This document shows, in pieces, positions 15,134-45,900 of a stretch of DNA of 64,000 nucleotides. A program made the translations under genes and the position numbers. The notes beneath the pieces are model-generated. The model did not search any database. It was not told the DNA's origin and worked only from the letters and a program-made list of their open reading frames with translations. The stretch spans positions 186,001-250,000 of the IMG/VR virus record IMGVR_UViG_3300042473_001540; one strand, written 5' to 3'. Numbering within the stretch: the first letter of the stretch is position 1; each line of letters begins with the position of its first letter.

Positions 15134-15505
15134 ATGACCGATGATCTCGGAAACCTTTCTGACAATGACTTCAAGCGCCTAGTGCACCTGGTGAACGAGA
15201 TCATCCACCTAAGCCACGAAGGTGCTCGAGAAGGGCAAGCTCGGGCACACGACATCTACGCACTGTCACGAGATGCACGCGACATCTTGATCCTGGACGA
15301 AACCAGTCGGGAAGCTATGCGACGCCTCACAAATACTGAACGTCCCACCATGTATGGGGTCACCATCAGCAAGTCTGTGGAAGACTATGTTCGTGCTGGC
15401 ATGAAGATCAATGCCATCAAAGAGCTGCGAACTGAAACGGCTCTGGGCCTGAAAGAGGCCAAGGACGTTGTGGAGGCTTTTGCCAGCACAATTACGCCCT
15501 TTTAG
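15134..15505 (+). CDS. Protein with a ribosomal protein L7/L12 C-terminal-like domain
   Basis: GMKINAIKELRTETALGLKEAKDVVE. Confidence 0.8.
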   Translation: MTDDLGNLSDNDFKRLVHLVNEIIHLSHEGAREGQARAHDIYALSRDARDILILDETSREAMRRLTNTERPTMYGVTISKSVEDYVRAGMKINAIKELRTETALGLKEAKDVVEAFASTITPF

Positions 15506-16450: not shown

Positions 16451-16519
16451 AGTTTTTGGTTGACACATAGCTACACCTAGTCTAATGTGCGTTGATAAGA
16501 CAGTTTTTGTGAGGACGAG

Positions 16520-17731
16520 ATGAGCAAGTTCAGTTGCCCTGTGGTGCGTGTGGCCGCAGTCGAAGAACATCCGAATGCGGATCGCCTTTCTCTTGTGCGC
16601 CTTGAAGGCCTCGGTTATCTCTGCATCGCAAACAAACTAGAGGATGGTAGCCCGCGCTACAAGCCCGGTGACTGGGTCGTATACATTCCCTCAGCCTCGG
16701 TGCTGCCTGAATGGCTGCTCAAGGACATGGGATTTTGGAACGAAGACGCTGGTAAGGGTGTGCTGGCAGGCAGTGATGGCAACCGTGTGAAGCCACTCAA
16801 GCTGCGTGGTATTTTCAGCGAAGGTGTGCTGTATGGGCTCATTGCATATGGTGATGACGATTGCCTTTCTGCTGATTTTGGGTCGGCGACGGATGTACAT
16901 GTAGTAGGCAAAGACAGTCTTGAATATCCAGTCAAGCTAGGCGAGGATGCTGCTGCAATCTTGGGCATCACCAGGTGGGAGCCGCCCATTCCCGCTGCGA
17001 TGTCTGGTGAAGTTGCCAGTGTTGCTGAGGCTGCTCTTACCTACGATTTTCAGCGTTGGGAGAGCGTGCCTGACATCTTCGAACCTGGTGAGGTGGTGGT
17101 GGCCCAAGAAAAAATTCATGGATCTTGTACCATCATCCAGTACTTCCCAGGCATGGACCATCCCGAGATGTTCCCCGACCATGCAGGCTACCGCAGCATC
17201 ACTGTCAGCAGCAAGGGACTAGGCGGTCAGGGTTTGGTGTTCAAGAACAACGAAGCCAACGCCAACAACCTCTATGTGCGGGCACTTGGCACACTGCTAG
17301 CCGACCATGACCTCGCCGGGCTCCTCCACAGGATGAGCAAGGTGGACGGCGGTGCTCATCCGGTGGCTATCCTGGGAGAAGTTTTCGGCAAGGGCGTGCA
17401 GGACCTCGACTACGGCACCACTAAGCCCACGTTCCGGGTGTTCGACATGCGGATCGGGCGGGAGTGGCTAAGTCCCGATGCCGTGGCCTACTGGGCAAAG
17501 GACCTGCCCTGTGTACCTACCCTCTACACTGGCCCCTTTGACCAAACTGCCATTGAGGCTGTGAGAGACGGTGTCACAACGGTGGGTGGCACCAATGTGC
17601 GGGAAGGTGTGGTGGTGCGCAGCCTGGTTCCCACCGAGCATCCCCTGCACGGTAGGAAAATCTGCAAATTCATCTCTCCGGCGTATCTGCTCCGCCGAGT
17701 GAAGAACGGCGAGGCAACGGAGTTCAACTGA
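16520..17731 (+). CDS. RNA ligase, DRB0094/Rnl2-like family with N-terminal OB-like domain
   Basis: VEEHPNADRL, motif I EKIHGS, GEVFG, FRVFD, REGVVV, KICKFIS; promoter TTGACA-N17-TAATGT at 16460. Confidence 0.88.
   Translation: MSKFSCPVVRVAAVEEHPNADRLSLVRLEGLGYLCIANKLEDGSPRYKPGDWVVYIPSASVLPEWLLKDMGFWNEDAGKGVLAGSDGNRVKPLKLRGIFSEGVLYGLIAYGDDDCLSADFGSATDVHVVGKDSLEYPVKLGEDAAAILGITRWEPPIPAAMSGEVASVAEAALTYDFQRWESVPDIFEPGEVVVAQEKIHGSCTIIQYFPGMDHPEMFPDHAGYRSITVSSKGLGGQGLVFKNNEANANNLYVRALGTLLADHDLAGLLHRMSKVDGGAHPVAILGEVFGKGVQDLDYGTTKPTFRVFDMRIGREWLSPDAVAYWAKDLPCVPTLYTGPFDQTAIEAVRDGVTTVGGTNVREGVVVRSLVPTEHPLHGRKICKFISPAYLLRRVKNGEATEFN
17636..17731 (+). repeat. Copy 1 of the RNA ligase 3'-end direct repeat
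   Basis: Encodes EHPLHGRKICKFISPAYLLRRVKNGEATEFN*. Confidence 0.9.
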
Positions 17732-17813
17732 TGCGCTACGATCTACTGGAGGTCTACTGCTGCCTATGCCCAAGTCCCTAGACATATTGATCCCAGAAAC
17801 AGAAACTTTCTGG

Positions 17814-17841
17814 TTGACAATGTCCGGAACTGTGCTAATAT
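17814..17841 (+). promoter_or_regulatory. Early promoter
   Basis: TTGACA-N16-TAATAT with TGC. Confidence 0.7.
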
Positions 17842-17868
17842 GACGTATAATACATAAAGGACTAACAA

Positions 17869-18141
17869 ATGAGCGATCTCCCCAAGCCTATGTTTGCTAA
17901 CGTTGGCCGCGCGTATGTGGCTGCTGCCGCGTTGGGTCTAGACACTAGCAATCTCAGTCGTGATCGTGCTGATACTGTGCTCCGCGCGCTGGTCAAAATG
18001 CCTGGTTGGCTGGAACAAAACCTGGATGTGTATCAGATGTGGATGGCTGATGTTGACCCCTGGCATTGCTTCATCCGTGACCTGAGCGCGTACACCAAGC
18101 AAGTGCGGGCTCACACGAAAGCTACCACGCGGGCCAAGTGA
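17869..18141 (+). CDS. Hypothetical protein in the cassette between the repeats
   Basis: Own promoter and AAGGA RBS. Confidence 0.75.
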   Translation: MSDLPKPMFANVGRAYVAAAALGLDTSNLSRDRADTVLRALVKMPGWLEQNLDVYQMWMADVDPWHCFIRDLSAYTKQVRAHTKATTRAK

Positions 18142-18235
18142 GTATCGACTGCATAGCAGGAAAATCTGCAAGTTCCTCTCTCCGTCATATCTTCTCCGAC
18201 GGGTGAAGAACGGTGAAACAACAGAGTTCAACTGA
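18140..18235 (+). repeat. Copy 2: orphan, diverged RNA ligase 3' end
   Basis: Encodes EYRLHSRKICKFLSPSYLLRRVKNGETTEFN*; 67/78 nt identical to copy 1 over 18158-18235. Confidence 0.9.
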
Positions 18236-18247
18236 GTCGGGGCCACG

Positions 18248-18526
18248 ATGACCGAAAACTATATTCTCTTGAAATGGGGCACACTCAAGGGCTATCGGGT
18301 AGCTGACAACCCTGTGGCGCAAGGTTTGATTAAACAGTACATGGAGTTGGGTGCCAGCGCCATGCACCAACAGGACACTCCCGAACAAAAACAAATCATA
18401 TGCGAACTGCTGCCTGCTCTGGCGTGCCCGCGCCGTGCCTTCCCCAACCCATACGACCCCACAGGGCTGCTGCACTGGATCGCAACCCAGGAGCCGGTCA
18501 TTCTCGGACGCGACCCCGCTGGCTAG
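18248..18526 (+). pseudogene. Chimeric ORF: phage N-terminus fused in frame to the C-terminus of a high-GC bacterial gene
   Basis: Abrupt change in composition and codon usage near 18410 (...QKQIICEL|LPALACPRR...). Confidence 0.65.
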
Positions 18527-19700
18527 CCGGCTGGCCATTTCAGGATGCCGCCATGTCACGCCGCTTTCTCGTTACCGGAGGTGCCGGCTTCGTCGGCAGC
18601 CATCTCGTCGCCGCCCTGCTGGACCAAGGCGCGGAGGTGGTGGTGTTCGACAACCTGCGCACCGGCCATCGCGAAGCCGTGCTCCCCGGCGCCACGCTGG
18701 TCACCGGCGCGCTGGAGGACCCCGATGCGATCGCGTCCGTGCTGGCGCAGGGGCCGTGGCATGCGGTGTTCCACTTCGCCGCGCTGTCGCTGGTGGGCGA
18801 TTCCATGCGCGACCCGATCGGCTATCTCTCGGCCAATGTCGGCAACGGCCTGCGCCTGTTGGAGGCCTGCGTGAAGCACGGCGTGCCCCGCTTCGTGTTC
18901 TCCTCCACCGCCGCCCTGTTCGGCACGCCAGACCGCATGCCGATCGACGAGGAAACCGCGATCGACCCCGGCTCACCCTACGGCGAAAGCAAATGGATGA
19001 TGGAGCGCGCGCTGGGCTGGGCCGAACGCATCCACGGCATGCGCTCCGCCTGCCTGCGCTACTTCAACGCCGCCGGCGCCGACCCGCAGGGCCGCCTGGG
19101 CGAGGACCACACGCCGGAAACCCATCTGATCCCGTTGGCCATCGACGCCATGCTCGGCCGTCGCGCCGAACTCGCCGTGTTTGGCACCGATTACGACACG
19201 CCGGACGGCACCTGCATCCGCGACTACATCCATGTCACCGACCTCGCCGCCGCCCACCTCGCGGCGCTGGAGCGGCTGGACCACGCCAGCGTCACCTACA
19301 ACCTCGGCACCGCCGCCGGGCATTCGGTGCTGGAGGTGATCCAGAGCGTGGAGCGCGTCAGCCGCCGCCCGGTGCCGCACCGCTTCGCCCCACGCCGCCC
19401 TGGCGACCCCGCCCGCCTTGTTGCCAGCCCGGCGCGGATCATGCGCGAAACCGGCTGGCAGCCGCGCCTCGCAGCACTGGATGACATCGTCGCCACCGCC
19501 CTGGCCTGGCGCGAAGCCCATCCGCGCGGCTACGGCGGATGAGTTACCGCATCCCGGCGCATCGGCCTGTGCGTGTTCTCAGAAGTGCATTTTTCACCTA
19601 CTTATGTCCTCATCCGCCCAGCCGCCGCAGCGAGGACCGCCACGCCATGAGCCAGCCTGCCGCGACCACGGTCGCCAAGAACCTGGGCGCATGACGCTGG
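18410..19700 (+). other. High-GC bacterial DNA segment embedded in phage sequence
   Basis: Third codon positions almost all G/C; gene fragments at both ends; no transposase, integrase or target duplication seen. Confidence 0.85.
18553..19542 (+). CDS. galE: UDP-glucose 4-epimerase
   Basis: GGAGFVG, HFAALSLVG, FSSTAA, YGESK (YxxxK), LRYFNAAGA, DGTCIRDYIHV, RRPGDP. Confidence 0.96.
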   Translation: MSRRFLVTGGAGFVGSHLVAALLDQGAEVVVFDNLRTGHREAVLPGATLVTGALEDPDAIASVLAQGPWHAVFHFAALSLVGDSMRDPIGYLSANVGNGLRLLEACVKHGVPRFVFSSTAALFGTPDRMPIDEETAIDPGSPYGESKWMMERALGWAERIHGMRSACLRYFNAAGADPQGRLGEDHTPETHLIPLAIDAMLGRRAELAVFGTDYDTPDGTCIRDYIHVTDLAAAHLAALERLDHASVTYNLGTAAGHSVLEVIQSVERVSRRPVPHRFAPRRPGDPARLVASPARIMRETGWQPRLAALDDIVATALAWREAHPRGYGG

Positions 19701-19763
19701 AAGTCCTGCATGGAGTTTCCCAACCAAGAAACTTATCTGCAATGTTTGCTCACATGGAGTTGA
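19695..19763 (+). pseudogene. 3' remnant of an LTW-family gene cut by the galE segment
   Basis: WKSCMEFPNQETYLQCLLTWS* with an in-frame stop just upstream. Confidence 0.7.
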
Positions 19764-19832
19764 CGGCATCTGTGAGTCTGTTGCGTGTGATACAATGTAC
19801 CAACACCCTCTCTATGGACGGAGATAAAAAGG

Positions 19833-19860
19833 TTGACACAGTCTGTCTGTGCTGTATATT
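19833..19860 (+). promoter_or_regulatory. Early promoter
   Basis: TTGACA-N16-TATATT. Confidence 0.7.
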
Positions 19861-19884
19861 GAAGCTACACAAGGAGAACAACAA

Positions 19885-20367
19885 ATGGAAGCCACGCCTG
19901 ATCTAGCTGTCTACGTGCTGGCCCGAACTGATCTGCCCAGTATGAACCCAGGAAAGCTGGCTGCACAAGTACATCATGCTGGAACCCAGATGATGAGCCT
20001 ATTTGCAGATCATCCACTAGTTCAACAGTATGTTGCCGACGGTGTCTCACAAGGTGCCTACTACTTCAACACCACAATTGTGCTGGGTGCCACAATGGAC
20101 CAGCTTCATGGTCTGAGATGCACTTATGGTTGGGAATACCACCTCACTGTCAAGGGGTCAGTCGTCGACCCCAGCTACCCATTTTTTGTGGAAAATCAAG
20201 AGGTAGCTGATCTTGTTGCAGCTAATGGCAAGGCAGCTGTCATCAAAACCATGGATGATGGGCGTGTGCTGATGACTCGCCAAGAGACCACTTGCATTTG
20301 GTGCCTTGTGGATCGCAACAAGCCCGAAGTTTCAGACATTCTAGGCCATCTCAAACTCTATCCCTAA
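19885..20367 (+). CDS. Peptidyl-tRNA hydrolase type 2 (PTH2)-like protein
   Basis: VYVLARTDLPSMNPGKLAAQVHHA; C-terminal LKLYP. Confidence 0.7.
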   Translation: MEATPDLAVYVLARTDLPSMNPGKLAAQVHHAGTQMMSLFADHPLVQQYVADGVSQGAYYFNTTIVLGATMDQLHGLRCTYGWEYHLTVKGSVVDPSYPFFVENQEVADLVAANGKAAVIKTMDDGRVLMTRQETTCIWCLVDRNKPEVSDILGHLKLYP

Positions 20368-20385
20368 CAACAAAGGACACTGCCT

Positions 20386-20514
20386 GTGCTATTGCTGATT
20401 GAACTCATCGGTGCTCTGGTGCTCATTGGCGTATGTGCCTATGGTGCCAGCAAACTGATCGAAAGTTTCTACGATCGCAACCGAACCCCTCCCGACCGCA
20501 AGGACCCCAACTGA
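20386..20514 (+). CDS. Small single-pass membrane protein (not in the ORF track)
   Basis: GTG start after AAGGA; MLLLIELIGALVLIGVCAYGASKLIESF... Confidence 0.6.
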   Translation: MLLLIELIGALVLIGVCAYGASKLIESFYDRNRTPPDRKDPN

Positions 20515-20515
20515 T

Positions 20516-21436
20516 ATGTGGAATCAACCTCCGCGTGACTCCAATCCTCGAATCAACCCTCTACAGGAGACTCCCCGAGTGAACGCTCGATTCATCGCTA
20601 CCATGGTAGGTGGCGCAATGGCTGCTCTGCTGGCACTCACAGTGATCCTCGGCAGCTGGTACACAGTTGATGAGCGTCAGCGCGGTGTGCTGCTCCGCAA
20701 CGGCAAGCTGGTGAGCGTGGTGCAGCCAGGGCTGGGATTCAAAATCCCCTTCATCGACAATGTGGTGCTCATGAGCACCGAGACCGTCCTGCTGCGACTG
20801 GACAAGGAAGCGGTCTACAGCCGAGACCAGCAACCTGCAACTATCACCTTCTCGGTGAGCTGGCGTGTGAGCGAAGACAATGTGGACGATGTCTACAAGG
20901 AGTTTGGCGGGCTCCGAGGAGTTCAAGACCGTGTGATCCTGCCGGGTGTGCGTGACGAGCTCAAGAACGTAATGGGTCGCTACAACGCAGTCACAGCGAT
21001 TCAGGATCGCACCCGACTGGGCACAGATGTCAAGGCGGCCATTGTGGCCAACATCAAAGGGCCGTTTGTGATCGAGAATCTGGCTATTGAAAACATTGAT
21101 TTCAGTGACGCTTACGAAAAATCCATCGAACAGCGAATGCTCGCGGAGGTGGCTGTTGAAAGAGATCGACAGGATGCGATCCGAGAGAAGGTGCAGGCTG
21201 AAATTGTTGTAACCAAAGCGCAGGCCGAAGCTGATGCAGTCAAGGCACGAGCTGGAGCTGAAGCTGAAGCTATCCAACTGCGCGGCGAAGCTGAAGCCAA
21301 GGCCATCCGGGCCCGAGGCGATGCACTTCGCGCGAACGCAGAGCTAGTCACACTTACGGCTGCAGAGCGATGGGACGGTAAGCTCCCTACCACTATGGTC
21401 CCAGGTGCAGCACTGCCCTTTGTGCATGTGAAGTAA
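20516..21436 (+). CDS. SPFH/Band 7/prohibitin family membrane protein
   Basis: TM helix, SWYTVDERQRGVLLRNGK, GLGFKIPF, AEAEA coiled coil. Confidence 0.92.
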   Translation: MWNQPPRDSNPRINPLQETPRVNARFIATMVGGAMAALLALTVILGSWYTVDERQRGVLLRNGKLVSVVQPGLGFKIPFIDNVVLMSTETVLLRLDKEAVYSRDQQPATITFSVSWRVSEDNVDDVYKEFGGLRGVQDRVILPGVRDELKNVMGRYNAVTAIQDRTRLGTDVKAAIVANIKGPFVIENLAIENIDFSDAYEKSIEQRMLAEVAVERDRQDAIREKVQAEIVVTKAQAEADAVKARAGAEAEAIQLRGEAEAKAIRARGDALRANAELVTLTAAERWDGKLPTTMVPGAALPFVHVK

Positions 21437-21442
21437 TCAAAC

Positions 21443-21500
21443 AGAAAGGTGGGTGAAAGCTCACCTTTCTCCTTGACAAAAGTGTCAAACCCGCTAAATT
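21443..21500 (+). terminator. Terminator hairpin abutting an early promoter
   Basis: AGAAAGGTG-ggt-GAAA-gct-CACCTTTCT then TTGACA-N16-TAAATT. Confidence 0.8.
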
Positions 21501-21534: not shown

Positions 21535-21690
21535 ATGACCGAAGATCAGATTGAGCGTACCGTGGAACGTGCAACAGATCGCCTGGACGAGCGTTATATG
21601 CGAGGGGAGATCAGCCGGGCACGCTATGCTGATGAAGCTGACAAGCTGAGTACATGGGCTGAACGCGAGTATCGCAGGGCGCGTCGGTGA
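21535..21690 (+). CDS. Small hypothetical protein
   Basis: MTEDQIERTVERATDRLD...; start uncertain. Confidence 0.6.
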   Translation: MTEDQIERTVERATDRLDERYMRGEISRARYADEADKLSTWAEREYRRARR

Positions 21691-22028
21691 AATTGGGACA
21701 ACACCTACACCAACGCCAAATGCTGTTGGATCAAGAGCTGTTGAGAACCACGTTGTTGGCAGTGCAACGTGAGCGAGAACGTGTGCATGACCAGCACTAT
21801 GATCTGGAACGCTTTAAAAGCCAGATCATCAGTTGTGTTTTGGAAAATCGGCCCATGCTCATGTTTACTCCTGGAAATAACTGGACTGACCCTCAAAATC
21901 CTGAACACCCTCCACGTTTTGTGTGCCATCGAGACCACAAGTTATGGCAAGAGTTCCTAGTTTGGTTGGAAAGTGAACACATGGAAATCCAATACCATGG
22001 ATGGAATTTCACTGTGATAGCCAAGTGA
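21687..22028 (+). CDS. Hypothetical protein
   Basis: GTGA overlap. Confidence 0.65.
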   Translation: MKLGQHLHQRQMLLDQELLRTTLLAVQRERERVHDQHYDLERFKSQIISCVLENRPMLMFTPGNNWTDPQNPEHPPRFVCHRDHKLWQEFLVWLESEHMEIQYHGWNFTVIAK

Positions 22029-22309
22029 CAGAAGACAGAGTCTTCCACAATGCGCTGCTTTTGTTTCCCAAAGATCTTTTCTGCTGCTCTGTTACACTTG
22101 GCGAGGAATACTACCGCCAACAATACGAAATCTTGGATTGGCTACGCCAACAAGGACCTGGTGACACTGGAATTGGTGATCCACCACAAGGTGAGTGCGT
22201 TTGGGCATATACACAGCTTTTTGGATACCAGTATATCGCTTTCCCCACTAGGGAACTGGTGACGCATTTTCAGCTGGTTTGGCAAAACAACACAGGACAT
22301 AGTGGTTGA
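22025..22309 (+). CDS. LTW-family protein
   Basis: YIAFPTRELVTHFQLVWQ. Confidence 0.7.
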   Translation: MTEDRVFHNALLLFPKDLFCCSVTLGEEYYRQQYEILDWLRQQGPGDTGIGDPPQGECVWAYTQLFGYQYIAFPTRELVTHFQLVWQNNTGHSG

Positions 22310-24456: not shown

Positions 24457-25674
24457 ATGCACTACACGTTTCCCGAGATCACGCACCTGGATCAAGTGCT
24501 GGAAGCTGTCCAGGGTGTGGAAGGCTTCATTGTAGCCCAGCGGCCCTGGGGCACTGTGGTCAACTACATTCAGATGGGCCCGGACATGTTCCCCGAGGTC
24601 CATACTGCTGGAGGCAGCGCCAGCATGCGCGAGCGGCAGACTCGACTCAAGGCTATCCGCCGGGAGTGTAGGGGGCTGCTGTTCAGCCTTGATGGAAAGT
24701 TGGTGAGCCGCGCATTTCAGAAGTTTTGGAACGTGGGCGAACGGCGCGAGACTTTGATTGAAAACATCGATCTCACTCAGCCACACATCATCCTTGAGAA
24801 GTTGGATGGAAGTATGATTCGTGCTCTACCTCTAGGTAAGGGCTACTGTCTTGCAACCAAGATGGGGCCCACTGCTGTAGCAGCACAGGTTGAGCCGTTC
24901 GTGGCAACTCGAGACAACTATGACCGATTTATCCGAGACACACTGGAGCAGGGATACACTGCCTGTTTCGAGTGGTGTACTCGTCAACAAAAGATTGTGT
25001 GTGATTATCCAGTTGATCGACTGGTGCTGACTGCTGTGCGTCACATCAACTCGGGTGAGTATCTCACCTACTCTCAGATGCAGGAACTGGCGGCCGAGTA
25101 TGAGCTGGATCTAGTCAAGGCCTATCCTGGTACTGTGGCTAGCATGGAGCAGCTCGTTCGGGAGACGCATGAGCTGGAAGGCGAGGAGGGGTGGATCATC
25201 CGGTGGGATGATGGACATATGGCCAAGTTGAAATCGGCCTGGTATGTGCGTATCCACCGTGCCAAGGATGCTCTCACGCAGGAGAAGAACCTCATCGACC
25301 TCATGCTGGCGGAAAAGCTGGACGACGTCAAGAGCTTTCTGCCTGTGGAGGACCTGGCTCGCATCGACGCCTACGAGAACGCCTTCTGGACGGGTGTGGG
25401 GCAAACTGCCTACATATGGAAGGACCAGTATGTCAAGCTCCGGCGGCAGTTTGGTGACGATAGAAAGCGGTTTGCACTGGAGGCAGCACCGGGTCTTGAG
25501 CCCAACCTGCGTAGTGCTGTGTTCAAGGTCTGGGCCCGTGAGGGCCACGTGGACTGGCGTGAGCTGGTGTGCGATGTGATCCGCAAATGCACTGGCACGC
25601 AGACCCGGGTGGACGAGGCACGCTCACTGTTCCGTGCGCCGCGGTGGAGCCAGCAAAGTGTGGGAGACGAATGA
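24457..25674 (+). CDS. T4 Rnl1/RnlA-like RNA ligase
   Basis: ECRGLLF, RAFQKFWN, motif I EKLDGS, FEWC, EGWII, KLKSAWY. Confidence 0.9.
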   Translation: MHYTFPEITHLDQVLEAVQGVEGFIVAQRPWGTVVNYIQMGPDMFPEVHTAGGSASMRERQTRLKAIRRECRGLLFSLDGKLVSRAFQKFWNVGERRETLIENIDLTQPHIILEKLDGSMIRALPLGKGYCLATKMGPTAVAAQVEPFVATRDNYDRFIRDTLEQGYTACFEWCTRQQKIVCDYPVDRLVLTAVRHINSGEYLTYSQMQELAAEYELDLVKAYPGTVASMEQLVRETHELEGEEGWIIRWDDGHMAKLKSAWYVRIHRAKDALTQEKNLIDLMLAEKLDDVKSFLPVEDLARIDAYENAFWTGVGQTAYIWKDQYVKLRRQFGDDRKRFALEAAPGLEPNLRSAVFKVWAREGHVDWRELVCDVIRKCTGTQTRVDEARSLFRAPRWSQQSVGDE

Positions 25675-36180: not shown

Positions 36181-37413
36181 ATGAAAAAGTTATCCTTACA
36201 TAGTATAGTAGTTTTGATTGGTCCCACTAAGAGTGGCAAAAGCACATGGGCCCAAAACCAGTTTGACGCTGATGAAATCATAAGCCTTTCTTCAATCAAG
36301 AAAGAGTTGACAGGCAACAATTCAACAGTGGATATTTTGCCAAATATTTGGCACGAACTCTATCGTAGAGTTGATATTCGTATCGCCAACGGGCAACGTG
36401 CAGTAGTTGATTCCACTAATCTAAAAGACAAGGACAGATTTACTTTTCTTGATATTGCCGAAAAGTATGGTGTGGAAGTCTATTACAAACCTTTTGACCT
36501 TGAATGGGGCACAATACAGCAAAACTCTGGTTCTTGTTATGACTTTGACTCTTTGAGAAAAAGCTATAGTATATGGAAAAATGCTCGCACACAGGTGTTA
36601 CAGGGCGATAATAAACGAGCTGTTGTGCTGTGTGGTGACGAAACCACTGTTGGATTTCCAAATGAATTGCAGAGTGCAAGGATTTTAGCAGTAGGCGATG
36701 TTCATGGCAATTTTCCAGCTATGCAGCAGGCAGTGCAAATGGCACAACAGTTACACGCAAAGCTAGTGTGGCTGGGAGATATTGTGGACTATGGCGCCAA
36801 TAATCTCAAATGTTTGAAACTTGCATATGACACTGTTCGAGACGGGCAAGCACTTATGATTTGGGGAAATCACGAAAGAAAAATTGATCGCTGGATTAGG
36901 AGCGACTTGGGTGAAACCTTTAATGGCAAACTTAGCGAGTCAAATCTATCTACTATAAGAGAAATCAACAGTTTGAATGACTTGCGGAAAAAGAAGTTTC
37001 TTGCAGCTTGGACAGCACTAAGAAACTGGAGTTTTAACCACCTAACAGTGGGAAAATTTTTGTTTACTCATGGTGCAGCAACACCTGCCATGTGGGCCAA
37101 CAAGGATCGCAGATTGCAAGGTGTTTGTGCAAATATGGCCTATTTTGGTGAGGTAGACACTGTTTCACCGACCAAGAATGATGGATATCCAAACCGTATC
37201 TGGAATTGGGTTCAAAACATACCTGCTGATCATACTGTTGTTGTAGGGCATGATTGGCTTGATCGTGTCAGTTACAACGTTGTGGAAAAAGCAAATTCTT
37301 GTGGCGGCCGGGCATTTGTTACAGATTGTGGTAGCAGCAAAGGCGGTCGTTTGGGTGCACTTTTTGTTGATCAACATAGCAAAGAAGTTTTGCCTTACTA
37401 TTTTGACACTTAA
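36181..37413 (+). CDS. Polynucleotide kinase-phosphatase-like (P-loop kinase plus metallophosphoesterase)
   Basis: GPTKSGKS, VVDSTN; GDVHG, GDIVDYG, GNHE; promoter TTGACA-N16-TATAGT at 36148. Confidence 0.85.
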   Translation: MKKLSLHSIVVLIGPTKSGKSTWAQNQFDADEIISLSSIKKELTGNNSTVDILPNIWHELYRRVDIRIANGQRAVVDSTNLKDKDRFTFLDIAEKYGVEVYYKPFDLEWGTIQQNSGSCYDFDSLRKSYSIWKNARTQVLQGDNKRAVVLCGDETTVGFPNELQSARILAVGDVHGNFPAMQQAVQMAQQLHAKLVWLGDIVDYGANNLKCLKLAYDTVRDGQALMIWGNHERKIDRWIRSDLGETFNGKLSESNLSTIREINSLNDLRKKKFLAAWTALRNWSFNHLTVGKFLFTHGAATPAMWANKDRRLQGVCANMAYFGEVDTVSPTKNDGYPNRIWNWVQNIPADHTVVVGHDWLDRVSYNVVEKANSCGGRAFVTDCGSSKGGRLGALFVDQHSKEVLPYYFDT

Positions 37414-39503: not shown

Positions 39504-40436
39504 ATGACAACTTGGGAACAGGTGGCTGACGACAGCAGATACACAAAGGTACTTGACAAGGGCTTTGTGGGCTTGATTGACCACATGGGCAGTGATCAAG
39601 CCATTGTGCAAGCTGCTCGAGTCAGCTATGGCGAGGGCACAAAATCTGTAAATGAGGATCGCGGTTTGATCCGCTATCTCATGAGGCACATGCACTCGAC
39701 TCCATTTGAGATGGTGGAATTCAAGTTTCATCTCAAAATGCCAATCTTTGTAATGCGTCAACATGTGCGACACCGAATGGCCTCAATCAACGAATACAGT
39801 GGTCGTTATAGTGTTATGACGGATGAGTTTTATATTCCTGAACCAACTCGAATTCAAGCGCAAAGCAGTGACAACAAACAGGGCAGTGCCGGACAACTTG
39901 CAAAGCAAGAACTGGAAATAGCACTCAACACAATCCAGCGAGTAAGTGCTGAAAACTATCTAGACTATCTCAGCCTCATAAATGACCCCAATGGACGAGA
40001 CTATAAATTTGGTGAGCGTCAGGGCCTGGCACGCGAGCTGGCACGTATGGTGCTGCCAGTAAACAACTACACTGAATTGTATTGGAAAATTGACCTCAAA
40101 AACCTGTTTCACTATCTCAATCTCAGAATTGATTCTCACGCGCAATATGAGATCCAACAGTTGGCCTTACCTATTGCAGAGCATGTGAAACGCATTTGTC
40201 CAATTGCATGGGAAGCGTTTGAAGACTATTGGCAGCAAGCCACAACTGTGAGTAGGCTTGAAAAAAACCTATTGCAGGAGCTTATCAACTTCAGTAACGT
40301 ACAGAGCGTGAGTTTTGCAGACAGTTATGAGACTATGATCCAAACCGCAGGTAGCAAATCACAACTGCAAACACAGTTTGGAATGAGCAAACGTGAGTTG
40401 GCAGAATTTGAGAAGCAGTGGAAGCTGGCCCTTTAG
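39504..40436 (+). CDS. thyX: Flavin-dependent thymidylate synthase
   Basis: AARVSY, HSTPFE, RHRMASINEYSGRY (RHRx7SxR), ARMVLP. Confidence 0.96.
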   Translation: MTTWEQVADDSRYTKVLDKGFVGLIDHMGSDQAIVQAARVSYGEGTKSVNEDRGLIRYLMRHMHSTPFEMVEFKFHLKMPIFVMRQHVRHRMASINEYSGRYSVMTDEFYIPEPTRIQAQSSDNKQGSAGQLAKQELEIALNTIQRVSAENYLDYLSLINDPNGRDYKFGERQGLARELARMVLPVNNYTELYWKIDLKNLFHYLNLRIDSHAQYEIQQLALPIAEHVKRICPIAWEAFEDYWQQATTVSRLEKNLLQELINFSNVQSVSFADSYETMIQTAGSKSQLQTQFGMSKRELAEFEKQWKLAL

Positions 40437-42205
40437 GCCAGCTTCGCTTCTAGGGCTGCAAGTTTTTGACTTAGTTCTTGCACTGCTGCCCATAATATAG
40501 GTACTAACTTGCTGTTGTCTACTGACTGATAGACTGGATGGCCGTTTTCATCAACTTCATCTTTCTGGCCCTTAACAGCTTGTGGTACCACAGCTTGAAG
40601 TTCATGAGCTAAGAAGCCACTAGACCTTTCAGTCCGCATTGAGTCAACCCAGTTATAGGTTTTGGCATGAACTTTGCCTACTAAATCCAGGGCTTGGCTT
40701 AACGGAGCAATGTTTGTTTTGCGTCGATAATCAGATAGGCTGTTGTAATAGGTGCCGGCATCATCGAAAAGTATACTTCCTGACTCATATGCGTTTAGGA
40801 TTGATGTTGTATTGATTTTGAATGATATACCTTTTTGGACCGCAGGTGTTATTGGATAACTGCCCCAAAGATTTATCATAGTATTTGGCTGAGGGTTGAA
40901 GGGCTGACTTACGGTTGACCTGATGTTGATACCATCGGTGTTGGCTTGATTCATATTGATAGTAAGAAATGAATCATTGAACGCTGGGGAGGCAGTGGCA
41001 TTTGCTGCAATTGTTACGTCACCCAACCTCAAACCACGGTTTACAAACCGGGCAGTCTCAACACCAGATATGAAACAGCTTAGCTGATTTGACGCCACTT
41101 GGCCTAGTCCTGTTTGTAAATCACCTTTGAAAACATATTTCATAGGGCCATCAGATTCAGAAGGGGAGCCAGCACAGAATTTGTGAGAAAACACTGTCCA
41201 CAATTTTGTGTTCAAGCTACCAAGGTCAAATACGGCATCCACAGTAGGAATATTTGTAGCATCTTTCCGCATGAAAATTGTGGGACTGACGGGAGGCGTC
41301 CCAAGGGTATCAGCATTTAAGGCGCTTGTGGCTTTGCCATCAAAATTTGTGGCGTAGATAGTATTGTATTTGAAGCTGGTACTACCAAGGTTGTATAAGT
41401 TGTCATTTATTGGTAGATTTGTTTGGTCGCGACGCATGTAGCTTCCTGATGGTATGCCACCAAGGAAAACGCTGTTTTGGGCCAACAAAGTGCTTGTGCT
41501 TTCGCCATAAAATTTGGCATTGGGCAATGTGGGATTTAAGGTTATTCCTGGATAGACACTTGTGAACCCTTGTAATGGATTGGTTGGTGTTGCTGCTGGA
41601 GCGAAAGTTGCATCATTACTTACTACTGCAACCAGTTGTCCACCTACAGTCAATCTCAATACCTTATGGATTGCATTTAAGGTGTCTGTTACCAACAGTG
41701 CATCAACATTTGTATAGACTGGTATGCTGGGACTATTTGCATCGTTGCCGTCAGCGGCACCCAGCGGACCAACTAAGTTCCACTGTGATGAACCATACAC
41801 AAAAAGTTGTTTTTTAGTTTGATCATACAACAGCTCTCCGTCAACAGGATTTACAGGGCCAGGAGGAGAGGGAGGGCCTGGAGGAGTAGGACCAGGTGGT
41901 GTGGGTGGAGGTATGTTGGGTGTAGTTTGTACCGGGGCTGCACTTTTCCAGGCAGTGCCGTCATATACTTTCAATTGAGCGTTGGCAACGTCATACCATA
42001 ATTGACCAACTCTTGGATTACTGGGCCCAGATAATGGTGCCCCAGCAAAGTTTTCCAACATCCATACTAAGTTTTCAACAACAGGCTCACCGTAATTGGG
42101 ATAATTACGCCCAGGCAACCGCAACGAAGTTGCGGTTGTGTTGATTGTCTTGTCAGGAATGGATGCAATCGGAGTTCCGCTGTAACTGTTGATCACATAT
42201 GTCAT
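40433..42205 (-). CDS. Tail fibre with C-terminal peptidase S74-type chaperone
   Basis: ENLVWMLENFA N-terminus, poly-Pro linker, SDYRRKTNI...GFLAHELQAVVPQAV...VDNSKLVPILWAAVQEL; TAAATA at 42236-42231. Confidence 0.85.
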   Translation of the reverse strand: MTYVINSYSGTPIASIPDKTINTTATSLRLPGRNYPNYGEPVVENLVWMLENFAGAPLSGPSNPRVGQLWYDVANAQLKVYDGTAWKSAAPVQTTPNIPPPTPPGPTPPGPPSPPGPVNPVDGELLYDQTKKQLFVYGSSQWNLVGPLGAADGNDANSPSIPVYTNVDALLVTDTLNAIHKVLRLTVGGQLVAVVSNDATFAPAATPTNPLQGFTSVYPGITLNPTLPNAKFYGESTSTLLAQNSVFLGGIPSGSYMRRDQTNLPINDNLYNLGSTSFKYNTIYATNFDGKATSALNADTLGTPPVSPTIFMRKDATNIPTVDAVFDLGSLNTKLWTVFSHKFCAGSPSESDGPMKYVFKGDLQTGLGQVASNQLSCFISGVETARFVNRGLRLGDVTIAANATASPAFNDSFLTINMNQANTDGINIRSTVSQPFNPQPNTMINLWGSYPITPAVQKGISFKINTTSILNAYESGSILFDDAGTYYNSLSDYRRKTNIAPLSQALDLVGKVHAKTYNWVDSMRTERSSGFLAHELQAVVPQAVKGQKDEVDENGHPVYQSVDNSKLVPILWAAVQELSQKLAALEAKLA

Positions 42206-42268
42206 ATTGCTTGCCTCAGAGTATTTCTGATATTTATGCAGCAAATGACCTTGCTAGCCACAAAAAGC

Positions 42269-42992: not shown

Positions 42993-45900
42993 TTATGCTG
43001 GTATCGACCCAGGTTGTGACAACAAAAATTGAGCTTGGTAAGTGCTGCTATATTGTAGCCCTAGTCCACCATAAGGCCACTGATACCCACCTGGGATAAC
43101 TTGCCGCACACTACCATCTCGCACTACGCTGGTAGTTGGGTGAGACATAGCTGTTGTTTTCCAGTCTTGTTTGAAGATTATAAGTCCAATATTTTTATTG
43201 CCTGCAGGAGGTGGTTCAAAAATTGGAGCCAATGTCTGAGAGGGGAATTGCAGATAAAATCCAGGGGCTGCATTTGAGGGGTTGCTTACTAGCATCCAAT
43301 CGTTTTGGAGCTTGCCATCCACAATAACATACGCATTTACCATTCCTGCTTGCCATTCTCCTGCGTTTGTAATAGTTACAGGATACAAATCACTGTTGCC
43401 TGTGCTACTCCAATACTGTGCCACAAATTTATCACTAATGCCGCCAGGTGTTCCCAGTGTGCCACGATTGATTTTTCTCAAAACAGCTTGGTTAGGAAAT
43501 GCAGTTGAGGCCGCAGGAGCTTTGTCAAAATATTCAATTCTTTCACCCTCAATCCAAATAACCCCAGGTCGTTTGTCATCAGGTTCAAGAAGAGTGTCGC
43601 CATTTGCTACAAAAATTTCCTGATCATTCCAGTTCAACACCTGAGTAAGAACGGTCCTGTCCTGATTCCCAAGGCGTAGGTATTGTGTGTCGTTATACAC
43701 ATTTGTCACAGCACGGAATGCAACACCATCTTTGCTGGGCAACGCTGTGGGATAATAGGCTTGAATCTCATCAGCTGCTGTCAAAGTGTAATGATTTCCT
43801 AACTTTAGGTACCAACTGTTTCCGGTTTTGACTATGGTATAGTCTAAAATCCAGCTTAAGCTACTGCCGTTGAGCCATACTTGCACACTTTGGAACTCCA
43901 ACGGAGTATTGGTGAATAGGTATTGGTTGCTGGAATCACCTGTCCAGACATCGTTATAAAAGGCACTTGCGCTGTCTTCACCCCAAGTTCTTACAACAAT
44001 AGTATCGCCGTCAACCACCGCCCAACTTGCCAAAAGTAGGTTTGTTCCTTGGATTTGATAATCATAGTTTTGGGCGACTGGATCAGCCACTTCAATGTAA
44101 ATGAAACTTTTATCTGATGGCGCTGTAGTGAATATTATTTGATTTCCAGCCAATGTATATTCTGTGTTAGGCAATACTGAGGCATTTAACCAAACTTGAA
44201 TAAATGACCCAGGATCTGGGAAAATAGCCAAATTATATGCTGTTGTGTTGTTGTCACCAATTGCACTCAAAAGGTAGGGTGGCTTCAATCGCTTGCCGTT
44301 ACTGTAGACCAGTGCATTGTTACTTTGTGCAGGATTGAATCCGCTCAAGGGATTATTTGGTGTATTCAAATTCAGCGGATACGTGAGCAATGGCAAGGTT
44401 ACTACCAAACTCTGTAATTTTTGTAGACTTTGATATTGACTGCTGTATACCAAAATTACAATAGTGTCGCCAGGCAAAGGTGTAAATCCCAGTCCAATTT
44501 GACGATTGTCGGCAGGGTTTACACCAAAACTCACTGTAGGCACTCCATTCCAAGTCATCAGAATAGTGTTAGCGCCTATGGGTTGATCCATTGTGATCAC
44601 AAAACTTGTGATGTCAAAAACAACAGTTTTAGTTTCTTGAATATGGCTGGAATAGTTAGCAATGCTGAACCCTGTGCCAGTACCAGGTGCTCCACCACTT
44701 ATGGTTACACCCACTTGTTGGAGGCCAACATTCTTATTCAAATAACTACCACGAGTCAACGGCAAGATGCTGGCTACTCCCCATTGTGGAGTAATCAACC
44801 CTCCTATACCTGTTCCATTTGTATACCATTCATTTTGACTTATGCTGGGCTGAGTATAATAGCCTTGATTTACAATACTCACAGCAGTAATTTGTCCAGC
44901 TACACCACCAAAAGCAGTAGTGCTGTCAACCTTGATTACCAAAGTTTGCGTTCCGCTCCCGTATTTGAAATACAAGAGATCTCCTACCTTGTAGCCAGAT
45001 CCTGGCTGATTTACATTTACAGCAGTTGCACGTATTGCAGTGACTAACACTGTTGTAGATGTGTAGCTCTGTGATGTATCACTTAACACGATAGTATCGT
45101 TCAAGTTGTAATCAATTCCTTGATTTACTATGCTCCAATTTCCGAGACCAGGGGTTGCTCCACCAAAACCAAAGCTGGTAATTACAACTGATCCCACTGG
45201 CGGGAAAACAAAAACAATGCTATTGCTGCTGGGATCATATACATAATCAGAGGTTGGTCCTAGAGTTTTCAAAATTCCGCCTACACTGACAATAATGTCA
45301 GCAGCACTGAACACTGGTTGGCCAATATAAAATCTATCAGTAATGCTGTCGCCAAGCCAACTTTCAGACAACACATTCCCAAAGCCCACTGTGGGTTGAT
45401 TGGCAACATCTATTATCAAGGTTTCTTTTCCTTGAAGCGGGAACAACTCTTCAGGATGATTGCCTTCCACATGTGGTCGACTCAACCCCTGTCCATCATA
45501 TACAGCATCAAGCGTGCCTCCTAGGGCACTTTCAAATGTGCTGCCTGCTTCTGCTACCCAAATGTTGGGTTTGGCTACAGCACTAAGTGGCGCCAGTGCA
45601 AATTCAAGACTTGTGCCGCCCCAACGTAGGACAAAGGTGGCATTTACGCCTGAACCGCCAGAGGCTTGCACTGCTGTTCCACTGGGAGTCAGTGTGTATG
45701 CCCCTGGAAAGACCACCTCAATTTTCAAAATTGCACCTGTCAAACTTGTGTTGACTACTTTCAGCTGAGCAGGAATAGTATAAGTGCCTCCAGATACAGA
45801 GAGTATATCATTTACACTATATCCTAATCCTTGATTAGCAACATCCACAGCAGTTATCCAGTTTTTGACTGTCCAATTGAGAGGAGTGTTTTGAAGATTA

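What the first reader, a model, noticed from the sequence alone, without database searches (positions are those of the whole stretch)
18410..19700. High-GC host galE segment that cuts phage genes at both junctions
Seen: an abrupt switch to very GC-rich DNA carrying an intact galE, the tail of an upstream bacterial gene fused in frame to phage ORF 18248, and the first codons of a downstream gene (MSQPAATTVAKNLG at 19647). Phage sequence resumes as the 3' end of an LTW gene. There is no target duplication and no mobility gene, so it looks like replacement rather than insertion. Knowledge, from recall: the protein resembles Acetobacteraceae/Rhodospirillales GalE (HFAALSLVG, ERALGWAERIHGMRSACLRYFNAAGADP). 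Inference: either recent capture of host DNA by illegitimate recombination, which would name the host, or an assembly chimera or artificial splice.
Basis: partly seen in the sequence, partly recalled or inferred. Interest (0 to 1): 0.7.

Follow-up and report, generated by a model that had tools for sequence, protein, structure and literature searches.

The report
Host galE gene captured by jumbo phage
A 1.3-kb piece of bacterial chromosome carrying an intact sugar-epimerase gene (galE) has really been spliced into this giant lake phage, replacing parts of two small phage genes; it is about 98% identical to an Acetobacteraceae-family genome, which points to the phage's host, but a phage carrying galE is a known kind of event.

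Summary
Window 18412-~19705 is 69.8% GC against 46.5% for the rest of the window. It holds an intact GalE gene (18553-19542), the last ~38 codons of the bacterial gene upstream of galE, a bacterial intergenic region, a 15-codon mini-ORF and the first 4 codons of a bacterial glycosyltransferase gene.

A related phage without the insert (L013) has 327 nt at this site: the tail of an 88-aa ORF and most of a 99-aa ORF ending LTWS. So this is a replacement that truncates two phage genes.

It is not an assembly artefact. The identical junctions occur in at least 17 contigs and at least 18 lake runs, from independent samples and assemblers.

The donor lineage was found. A 5.1-Mb genome (G048), in the same family as an Acetobacterales MAG, carries the segment at 97.5-98.5% identity inside a fully bacterial 72%-GC context. 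GC3 shows no amelioration.

The same cassette also sits in a diverged sister phage lineage with another left junction. A longer version sits at a second locus about 60 kb away in another strain. The copies are allelic mosaics.

Verdict: a real, recent host-gene capture by illegitimate recombination. It is a well-resolved new member of a known kind (phage auxiliary galE).

The parts
17814..17841 (+). Promoter-like site (TTGACA-16-TAATAT). It is the likely start of the phage transcription unit that runs through the 90-aa ORF, the chimeric ORF and galE.
   Evidence: Consensus scan, 10 of 12 matches, with no terminator-like site before 19836. This is a consensus match only; function was not shown.
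18248..18526 (+). Chimeric 92-aa ORF. 18248-18411 is codons 1-55 of a phage ORF that is 88 aa in relatives. 18412-18526 is the C-terminal tail of the bacterial 353-aa gene that lies upstream of galE.
   Evidence: Homology to L013 ends at 18411. Homology to bacterial contigs starts at 18412. The tail peptide aligns with the bacterial gene's tail.
18412..19705 (+). Captured bacterial segment (about 1.3 kb, 69.8% GC). The right boundary is ambiguous within 19703-19709.
   Evidence: BLAST to bacterial contigs L183-L186 and L200 runs from exactly 18412 to 19709. L013 phage homology stops at 18411 and resumes at 19708. Identity to genome G048 is 97.5%.
18429..18436 (+). Site of a 10-nt deletion relative to the bacterial donor and to the locus-B phage copy. 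It lies between short GCGCCG repeats and puts the phage ORF in frame with the bacterial tail.
   Evidence: Alignments of the window with L182, L183 and L200. The BLAST alignment is 1308 columns for 1298 window bases.
18542..18545 (+). AGGA ribosome-binding site of galE, 7 nt before the ATG. It is retained in every phage arrangement.
   Evidence: Read from the sequence. All three left-junction variants lie upstream of it.
18553..19542 (+). galE, encoding UDP-glucose 4-epimerase (329 aa). It is intact, with the GxxGxxG motif (G9-G15) and S117/118 and Y143-x-x-x-K147.
   Evidence: TIGR01179 388 bits against a cut-off of 262. Pfam Epimerase 4e-57. Motifs read from the translation.
19573..19619 (+). 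Conserved bacterial intergenic motif, less GC-rich than its surroundings. It is probably a regulatory region of the downstream glycosyltransferase operon.
   Evidence: Nearly invariant between the window, L200, L183/L185 and L016, although overall identity to these is 83-91%. There is no Rfam match.
19647..19694 (+). 15-codon bacterial mini-ORF (MSQPAATTVAKNLGA*). It overlaps, through the sequence ATGA, the start of the glycosyltransferase gene.
   Evidence: The same arrangement occurs in L183/L185, L200 and L016.
19691..19702 (+). First 4 codons (MTLE) of the bacterial family-2 glycosyltransferase gene, which is 926 aa in L183.
   Evidence: The gene call in L183 starts at the equivalent ATG. 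Bacterial and RNA contigs continue from here into the glycosyltransferase gene.
19710..19763 (+).
   Evidence: Identical to the 3' end of the complete ORF in L013. The ORF has no Pfam or PHROG family.
19833..19860 (+). Promoter-like site (TTGACA-16-TATATT) in front of the next phage gene, the PTH2-like gene at 19885-20367.
   Evidence: Consensus scan, 11 of 12 matches. The site is conserved in L013.

Best explanation
WHAT IS SHOWN
The window belongs to a tailed jumbo phage of lake water. Related contigs reach 328 kb and are estimated about 77% complete.

During an infection, a piece of the host chromosome was joined into phage DNA by illegitimate recombination with little or no homology. The host is an uncultured Acetobacteraceae-family bacterium with about 72% GC, represented by genome G048. 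The piece comes from a surface-polysaccharide gene cluster with the order 353-aa gene, galE, GT2, GT4.

At the locus in this window the piece replaced 327 nt. This destroyed the last third of an 88-aa ORF and the first 82 codons of a 99-aa ORF. Both ORFs have unknown function and are evidently dispensable.

WHAT IS INFERRED
Expression: galE kept its own ribosome-binding site and lies in the same direction as the phage genes. It is most likely transcribed by read-through from the phage promoter-like site at 17814. It would be translated just after the chimeric upstream ORF, which stops 26 nt before the galE start.

Function: the enzyme interconverts UDP-glucose and UDP-galactose. The phage probably uses it as an auxiliary metabolic gene, to keep up or redirect the infected cell's nucleotide-sugar pool for surface-glycan or other glycosylation reactions.

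History after capture: the cassette spread by recombination to a diverged sister phage lineage. It exists, in a longer form, at a second locus in another strain. Its flanks have been trimmed differently in different lineages. Its alleles are mosaics shared with the host, which suggests continuing phage-host or phage-phage exchange.
For: Real and not chimeric:
- The identical GalE protein, in the same phage gene order, occurs in at least 17 contigs from JGI, ENA, Logan and NCBI assemblies.
- Thirteen loci (L001-L007, L010-L012, L014 over the full 6 kb; L008, L009 over shorter overlaps) are 99.9-100% identical to the window across both junctions.
- At least 18 lake-water runs hold 89-100% of the 31-mers of 17400-20700.
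- Single Logan contigs bridge both junctions (X1) or each junction separately (X8, X17).

Replacement: relative L013 lacks the insert and has intact 88-aa and 99-aa ORFs at the site.

Bacterial origin and donor:
- Bacterial contigs L183-L186 (71% GC; gene order PALP, 676 aa, 353 aa, galE, GT2, GT4) align at 90% from exactly 18412 to 19709.
- G048:C81 aligns at 97.5% (98.5% over the 1169 nt shared by all copies). It is bacterial and collinear with L183 over all 4.3 kb fetched.
- G048 shares nothing else significant with the 38 kb of the window that was searched.
- Named relatives are Acetobacterales/Acetobacteraceae.
- Metatranscriptome contigs carry G048-specific SNPs and run on into the glycosyltransferase gene. 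This shows the bacterial operon is expressed in rivers and lakes.

Recent: GC3 is 0.879 in the phage copy, 0.888 in the donor and 0.39-0.66 in phage genes.

Illegitimate recombination: about 2 nt of possible overlap at 18412-18413, and an ambiguous 4-7 nt at 19703-19709. The variant left junction uses a 6-nt GCCATT microhomology.

Gene kept intact:
- GalE scores as an equivalog and its motifs are present.
- Every junction variant spares the RBS, start and stop.
- Among copies there are 19 synonymous against 3 non-synonymous differences (window vs L178) and 31 against 3 (window vs L182), giving dN/dS of 0.03-0.06.

Spread:
- The L178/L187 lineage has a backbone 85-89% identical but a cassette 98% identical, with the same right junction.
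- In L182 the flanks are 93-94% identical to G000:C1:46284-53431, and the bacterial stretch is longer at 1455 nt.
Against: Host identity: phage GC (46.5%) and donor GC (about 72%) differ by 25 points. That is unusual for a phage-host pair, although from general knowledge jumbo phages such as phiKZ differ from their hosts as much. No CRISPR-spacer, prophage or tRNA link to G048 was found.

Expression: no evidence was obtained that the phage copy is expressed. The RNA contigs are the bacterial allele and no phage flank was covered. The promoter assignment is a consensus match only.

Selection: the low dN/dS cannot be credited to selection inside the phage. Much of the variation among phage copies looks imported from bacterial haplotypes.

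History: the order of events cannot be resolved. This covers one capture or several, which locus came first, and how junctions J1 and J3 relate. The tree supports are only 51-70%.

Reads: depths from Logan contigs are contig means, so a true per-base coverage test was not possible.
Confidence: 0.85

Rival explanations
1. Assembly chimera or artificial splice: a high-GC bacterial fragment was wrongly joined into a phage contig.
For: The record is a metagenome-assembled contig classed as linear and about 30% complete. The composition step is abrupt. One related contig (L188) looks like a mis-join across the shared galE repeat.
Against: The same two junctions are recovered at 100% identity in independent samples by different assemblers. 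Separate Logan assemblies of at least 18 runs also hold them. A diverged lineage carries the same right junction with 2% sequence divergence, which cannot come from one mis-assembly.
Confidence: 0.02
2. Old acquisition inherited vertically in this phage family, with the high GC kept by selection rather than by youth.
For: The cassette is present in at least two phage lineages whose backbones differ by 11-15%, and at two loci.
Against: - The cassette is 98% identical between lineages whose flanking genes are 85-89% identical, so it is younger than their split.
- It is 97.5-98.5% identical to a living bacterial genome.
- Non-coding bacterial flanks and gene fragments are still present.
- GC3 equals the donor's.
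- Relative L013 has the undisturbed site.
Confidence: 0.04
3. Several independent captures of the same host locus (locus A and locus B, and perhaps the different haplotypes), rather than one capture followed by movement between phage genomes.
For: - Phage copies are not monophyletic with respect to G048. The window copy is closer to G048 (98.5%) than to the L178 copy (98.0%) or the L182 copy (96.9%).
- In 18981-19302 the window carries the G048 haplotype at 10 sites where L178 and, at 8 of them, L182 share another.
- Locus B has different junctions on both sides.
Against: - Window and L178-type copies share exactly the same right junction and the same 54-nt phage-ORF remnant, so they descend from one event at locus A.
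- The locus-A segment is wholly nested in the locus-B segment.
- All phage copies share T at 19401 and 19482 where every bacterial sequence has C.
- Gene conversion with the host would give the same mosaic pattern.
Confidence: 0.3
4. Neutral passenger: galE is a recent hitch-hiker with no role in the phage and will decay.
For: - The capture is very recent.
- It includes useless fragments of neighbouring genes.
- No phage-allele transcripts were seen.
- The synonymous excess may have been inherited from bacterial alleles.
Against: - The ORF is intact in all variants recovered. The 90% cluster has 54 members and the listed full-length members are 329 aa.
- Flanks were trimmed in at least three ways that always spare the RBS and the ORF.
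- The cassette spread to a second lineage and a second locus, and is found in many samples.
- In one arrangement it is fused in frame to a phage ORF start (359-aa product, 16 contigs).
Confidence: 0.2
5. Reverse direction: the bacterium obtained the segment from the phage.
For: Near-identity alone does not give a direction.
Against: The segment has the bacterium's composition (72% GC), not the phage's. It is embedded in a gene order conserved across bacterial contigs that are only 78-90% identical. In the phage it carries truncated pieces of the bacterial neighbours.
Confidence: 0.01

Closest known systems
Phage-encoded galE reported as an auxiliary metabolic gene (for example the sponge-symbiont phage Bin1, PMC8518922, and Patescibacteriota phages, PMC12911398)
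   Same: A host-type UDP-glucose 4-epimerase gene sits inside a phage genome, is inferred to come from the host, and is proposed to act on nucleotide-sugar or O-antigen metabolism. IMG/VR itself holds hundreds of viral contigs with GalE-like genes (335 relatives).
   Different: All other viral GalE proteins found are at most 52% identical to this one, so this is a separate acquisition. Here the donor locus is known to about 98% identity, both junctions are mapped to a few bases, and bacterial non-coding DNA and gene stubs are still attached.
Lambda gal transducing phages (lambda dgal) formed by aberrant excision (recalled from textbook knowledge, not tested here)
   Same: Host DNA carrying gal genes, including galE, replaces phage DNA through illegitimate recombination with no target duplication.
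   Different: Lambda dgal arises from a prophage integrated next to gal, loses essential genes and is defective. Here the host piece replaces small dispensable ORFs in the interior of a jumbo phage genome, at two different loci. No integrase or att site was looked for or seen near it, and the genotype persists across many samples.
Morons of tailed phages: extra genes inserted between conserved phage genes, often with atypical composition (recalled from general knowledge)
   Same: An extra, compositionally foreign gene lies between genes that are adjacent in a close relative. It is dispensable for the phage core functions.
   Different: Classical morons carry their own promoter and terminator and sit between intact genes. 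This cassette shows neither signal and destroys two ORFs.

Membership tests
UDP-glucose 4-epimerase GalE (NCBIfam TIGR01179, SDR superfamily) | Full-length match to the equivalog model above its curated cut-off | tested here: met
   388.3 bits against a cut-off of 262.3, covering residues 5-326 of 329.
UDP-glucose 4-epimerase GalE (NCBIfam TIGR01179, SDR superfamily) | N-terminal NAD-binding GxxGxxG motif and the catalytic Ser and Tyr-x-x-x-Lys | tested here: met
   G9-x-x-G12-x-x-G15, S117/S118 and Y143-G-E-S-K147, read from the translation. All are conserved in every phage and bacterial copy.
UDP-glucose 4-epimerase GalE (NCBIfam TIGR01179, SDR superfamily) | Epimerase activity on UDP-glucose and UDP-galactose | not testable with these tools
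   Needs an enzyme assay.
Host-derived auxiliary metabolic gene or moron in a phage genome | The gene lies inside a bona fide phage genome, with phage genes on both sides | tested here: met
   Baseplate wedge, tail fibre and a 4016-aa virion protein lie in the window. RNA ligases and other phage genes flank galE. Contigs of up to 328 kb carry it internally.
Host-derived auxiliary metabolic gene or moron in a phage genome | Cellular origin: closest homologues are bacterial, and a close relative phage lacks the gene | tested here: met
   G048 at 97.5-98.5%. Other viral GalE proteins are at most 52% identical. L013 lacks it.
Host-derived auxiliary metabolic gene or moron in a phage genome | Own promoter and terminator (classical moron) | tested here: not met
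   No promoter-like or terminator-like site lies inside 18412-19705. The nearest promoter-like sites are phage ones at 17814 and 19833. These are consensus scans only.
Host-derived auxiliary metabolic gene or moron in a phage genome | Expressed during infection and beneficial to the phage | tested here: inconclusive
   RNA contigs over galE are the bacterial allele and no phage flank is covered. The ORF is intact in all variants. dN/dS is 0.03-0.06 but confounded by imported alleles.
Assembly chimera | Junctions unsupported outside one assembly | tested here: not met
   Junctions are reproduced in at least 17 contigs and at least 18 runs.
Specialised-transduction product of a temperate phage | Integrase and attachment site, with the prophage integrated beside the captured gene in the host | not tested
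   No integrase was looked for across the genome. The bacterial galE neighbourhood (L183, L200, L016) shows no prophage within the 4-11 kb fetched.

The most novel reading that the evidence does not exclude
The galE cassette is a gene in the act of being domesticated and is in continuing genetic exchange. After capture it moved between two loci about 60 kb apart and between phage lineages that differ by 11-15%. Its bacterial flanks are being whittled away in different ways. Its central tract is repeatedly overwritten by homologous recombination with the host chromosome during infection. If so, the lake time series holds a dated, junction-by-junction record of how a phage acquires and streamlines a host gene, and the phage-borne copy could also carry alleles between host strains.
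Probability: 0.35. Interest if true: 0.6.

Novelty: new member of a known kind. Interest (0 to 1): 0.45.

Why it matters
- It gives a sequence-level host assignment for an uncultured freshwater jumbo phage of at least 328 kb. The proposed host is an uncultured Acetobacteraceae-family species, despite a 25-point GC gap that would defeat composition-based host predictors.
- It is an unusually clean natural example of host-gene capture. The donor is known to about 98% identity, both junctions are mapped, the pre-insertion state is known from a relative, and several later rearrangements coexist in one population.
- It is therefore a usable model for measuring how fast captured genes are trimmed, moved and ameliorated.
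- It is also a practical caution. Abrupt high-GC islands in viral contigs are not necessarily contamination, and shared cassettes can cause real mis-joins (L188).
- The biology of a phage carrying galE is not new in itself.

Tried and rejected
- Megablast of 16500-21500 against GenBank phages gave no match, so no cultured relative helped.
- tRNA scan of the window found none, so there is no codon-usage or host clue from tRNAs.
- Rfam on 18300-19950 gave only a chance hit at E 0.52. The conserved bacterial intergenic motif is not a known RNA family.
- I first read the metatranscriptome contigs as possibly coming from the locus-B phage. SNP comparison assigned them to the G048-like bacterium instead.
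- I considered that the phage SDR and 'formyltransferase' genes near locus B formed a sugar-modification module that GalE might feed. The formyltransferase is PurN (purine synthesis; TIGR00639, 211 bits) and the SDR is below every cut-off, so I dropped the idea.
- A third left junction (J2) joins phage 99-aa ORF sequence directly to 18526. It rests on one Logan contig end in run X17 and a contig break in X12. Exact-pattern scans of viral and metagenome contigs found nothing, so I report it as weak.
- DNA for the contigs of P0004 and P0135 could not be fetched.
- A search of G048 with 38 kb of the window gave only a 77-nt, 77% match in the L7/L12-like gene. No spacer or prophage link was found.
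- The 5-nt CCTGC at both ends of the insert was considered as a target duplication and rejected as probable chance, because the site is a replacement.
Full report
WHAT IS THERE

Window 18400-19700 is a sharp compositional island. 200-nt windows read 0.67-0.745 GC inside it and 0.45-0.52 just outside. The segment is 69.8% GC and the rest of the window 46.5%. No other 1-kb bin of the window exceeds 0.564.

The island holds one long gene, 18553-19542 on the + strand (329 aa). It scores Pfam Epimerase 4e-57 and NCBIfam galE equivalog TIGR01179 388 bits against a cut-off of 262. The NAD-binding GxxGxxG motif and the Ser and Tyr-x-x-x-Lys catalytic residues are present.

The surrounding DNA is phage. 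It encodes a baseplate wedge subunit, a tail fibre, a 4016-aa virion protein, two RNA ligases and a PTH2-like protein. The window is part of a 133.7-kb IMG/VR record. Sister contigs reach 326-328 kb and are estimated about 77% complete. This is therefore a jumbo tailed phage.

THE PRE-INSERTION STATE

A related viral contig, L013 (about 86-88% nucleotide identity), aligns with window 16535-18411 and again with 19708-21436. It has only 327 nt between these two stretches.

Those 327 nt hold the last third of an 88-aa ORF and most of a 99-aa ORF that ends ...MEFPNQETYLQCLLTWS. In the window, the 88-aa ORF is cut after codon 55, and only the last 17 codons of the 99-aa ORF remain (19710-19763).

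Neither ORF has a known family.

BACTERIAL ORIGIN AND DONOR

Bacterial lake contigs L183-L186 are 71% GC and have the gene order PALP enzyme, 676-aa gene, 353-aa gene, galE, GT2 glycosyltransferase (926 aa), GT4 glycosyltransferase. They align with the window at about 90% from exactly 18412 to 19709.

The tail of the window's 92-aa ORF is the tail of the bacterial 353-aa gene. A 10-nt deletion near 18430-18435, relative to all bacterial copies, is what puts the phage reading frame in register with that tail.

Downstream of galE the window keeps three bacterial features:
- the bacterial intergenic region, with a strongly conserved 47-nt motif (19573-19619);
- the first four codons of the real GT2 gene (19691-19702).

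A search of 201 genomes of the family of an Acetobacterales MAG found one 5.1-Mb genome, G048, whose contig C81 carries the whole segment at 98%. The 4.3 kb fetched around it (L200) is 72% GC throughout and collinear with L183. It is 97.5% identical to window 18412-19709, and 98.5% over the 1169 nt shared by all copies. G048 shares nothing else of note with the 38 kb of the window searched. It is therefore a bacterial genome and not a mis-binned phage.

Contigs from river and lake metatranscriptomes cover only 18442-19701. They run on into the GT2 gene and carry the SNPs private to G048. So the bacterial operon is expressed in nature, but these data say nothing about the phage copy.

NOT AN ARTEFACT

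- The identical protein in the identical phage context was found in at least 17 contigs from JGI, ENA, Logan and NCBI assemblies, and in four more IMG/VR genomes.
- Eleven loci are 100% identical to the window over the full 6 kb spanning both junctions (L001 over 4.3 kb); two shorter loci are 99.9-100% identical over 3.7-4.1 kb.
- At least 18 lake-water runs hold 89-100% of the 31-mers of 17400-20700.
- Logan contigs from separate runs bridge both junctions.
- Caveat: Logan depths are contig means, so a per-base coverage test was not possible. The samples may come from one lake system.

AGE

GC3 of the phage galE is 0.879. The donor's is 0.888, and neighbouring phage genes are 0.39-0.66. Non-coding bacterial DNA and gene stubs are still attached. 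The capture is recent on the scale of amelioration.

MECHANISM OF JOINING

- At the left junction the phage and bacterial homologies overlap by about 2 nt (18412-18413).
- At the right junction, 4-7 nt (19703-19709) cannot be assigned to either parent.
- This fits illegitimate recombination with little or no microhomology.

THE CASSETTE IS NOT PRIVATE TO THIS GENOME

(a) A sister lineage (L178-L181, L187, and the fragment L017) has a backbone only 85-89% identical, with an extra nucleotidyltransferase gene and an extra 73-aa ORF. It carries the cassette at 98% identity with exactly the same right junction and the same 17-codon remnant.
- Its left junction differs. The 88-aa ORF is intact, and codons 1-26 of the 99-aa ORF are joined through a 6-nt GCCATT microhomology to position 18534.
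- This gives a 359-aa in-frame fusion with GalE, seen on 16 contigs.
- Because the cassette is far more similar than the backbones, it moved between the lineages after they split.

(b) A 177-kb contig (L182) has flanks 93-94% identical to another part of this same phage genome, G000:C1:46284-53431. That region is about 60 kb from the window's locus and lies outside the window.
- There it carries a longer version of the bacterial piece (1455 nt), with more of the upstream tail and 136 nt more of the GT2 gene.
- It replaces about 940 nt that encode four small ORFs, and it again creates a phage-ORF::bacterial-tail fusion.
- In G000, G001 and G002 that second locus is galE-free.

(c) Contig L188 joins the left side of (a) to the right side of (b). 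It is either a recombinant or an assembler mis-join across the shared repeat.

(d) One Logan contig end (X17) and a contig break (X12) hint at a third left junction at 18526. Pattern scans did not confirm it.

ALLELES

The copies are mosaics. In 18981-19302 the window shares the G048 haplotype at 10 sites where L178-type copies (and at 8 of them L182) share another. At 18621 and 18736 the window groups with L178. All phage copies share T at 19401 and 19482, where every bacterial sequence has C. Tree supports are only 51-70%.

This fits gene conversion between phage-borne and host copies, or between phage copies. It also fits more than one capture from different strains. I cannot separate these.

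Differences among copies are overwhelmingly synonymous: 19 to 3 for window vs L178 and 31 to 3 for window vs L182, giving dN/dS of 0.03-0.06. Because alleles may be imported from bacteria, this does not prove selection inside the phage.

Better, though indirect, evidence for retention:
- every arrangement spares the ribosome-binding site, start and stop;
- all full-length cluster members listed are 329 aa;
- the cassette has spread.

HOW IT MOST LIKELY WORKS (INFERENCE)

galE points the same way as the phage genes. The nearest promoter-like sites are phage ones at 17814-17841 and 19833-19860, with no terminator-like site between them. The gene is therefore probably read through from the upstream phage promoter and translated from its own AGGA site just after the chimeric ORF ends.

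The enzyme interconverts UDP-glucose and UDP-galactose. In the donor it sits in a polysaccharide-synthesis cluster. Phage-borne galE has been reported repeatedly as an auxiliary gene of nucleotide-sugar and O-antigen metabolism.

I propose that it sustains or redirects the infected cell's UDP-hexose pool. I put this at about 0.6, against about 0.2 for a neutral passenger; the remainder is undecided.

COMPARISON AND VERDICT

This works like known phage auxiliary galE genes, and formally like lambda gal transducing phages, in that host gal DNA replaces phage DNA by illegitimate recombination. It is a separate acquisition: other viral GalE proteins are at most 52% identical. It shows no sign of prophage-adjacent origin, and it lacks the private promoter and terminator of classical morons.

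It is a new, unusually well-resolved member of a known kind. Its main values are the host assignment across a 25-point GC gap and the coexisting junction variants, which make the capture process itself observable.

Noticed in passing
window 17636-17731 and 18140-18235: The last 96 nt of the 403-aa RNA ligase gene are repeated (82% identity) after the promoter-like site and the 90-aa ORF at 17869-18141. This suggests that this small gene unit was itself inserted by a recombination that duplicated the ligase 3' end. Sister lineage L178 has an extra nucleotidyltransferase gene at this spot.
   Followed up: partly
window 15134-15505, 16520-17731, 19885-20367, 24457-25674, 36181-37413: A cluster of RNA and translation repair-type genes: an L7/L12-like protein, two RNA ligases (one T4 Rnl1-like), a PTH2-like peptidyl-tRNA hydrolase and a kinase/phosphatase-like protein. 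Relatives also encode Thg1. It looks like a tRNA-repair toolkit against host anticodon nucleases.
   Followed up: partly
window 42993-55046 (-): A single 4016-aa ORF matching a virion structural protein family (phrog_10938). It is followed by a baseplate wedge gene (55043-58423) and lies near a tail-fibre gene (40433-42244).
   Followed up: no
G000:C1:46284-53431 (outside the window); L182 3554-5320; L199 4482-5465: A second, alternative insertion locus for the same bacterial galE piece in a related strain. In the window's own genome it holds four small ORFs (80, 53, 92 and 94 aa) instead. A phage SDR dehydratase/epimerase-like gene and a PurN gene lie 1.6-3 kb downstream.
   Followed up: yes
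window 19573-19619 and 19647-19694: A 47-nt motif and a 15-codon mini-ORF upstream of the bacterial GT2 gene are conserved among bacteria that are otherwise only 83-91% identical. This may be a leader or regulatory element of the polysaccharide operon. There is no Rfam match.
   Followed up: partly
L188 (JGI 3300046006, 7983-nt contig): A hybrid contig with the locus-A left flank, galE, and the locus-B right flank. It is either a deletion or recombination product between two galE copies, or an assembler mis-join across the 1.2-kb shared repeat.
   Followed up: partly
window 18413-18417 and 19705-19709: The pentamer CCTGC occurs at both ends of the inserted segment. It is probably chance, not a target duplication.
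   Followed up: no
window 21539-22084 region (HNH/HNH_5 gene, called at L002 9987-10532): An HNH endonuclease gene lies about 2 kb downstream of the insert. It is typical of phage homing endonucleases and is not adjacent to either junction.
   Followed up: no
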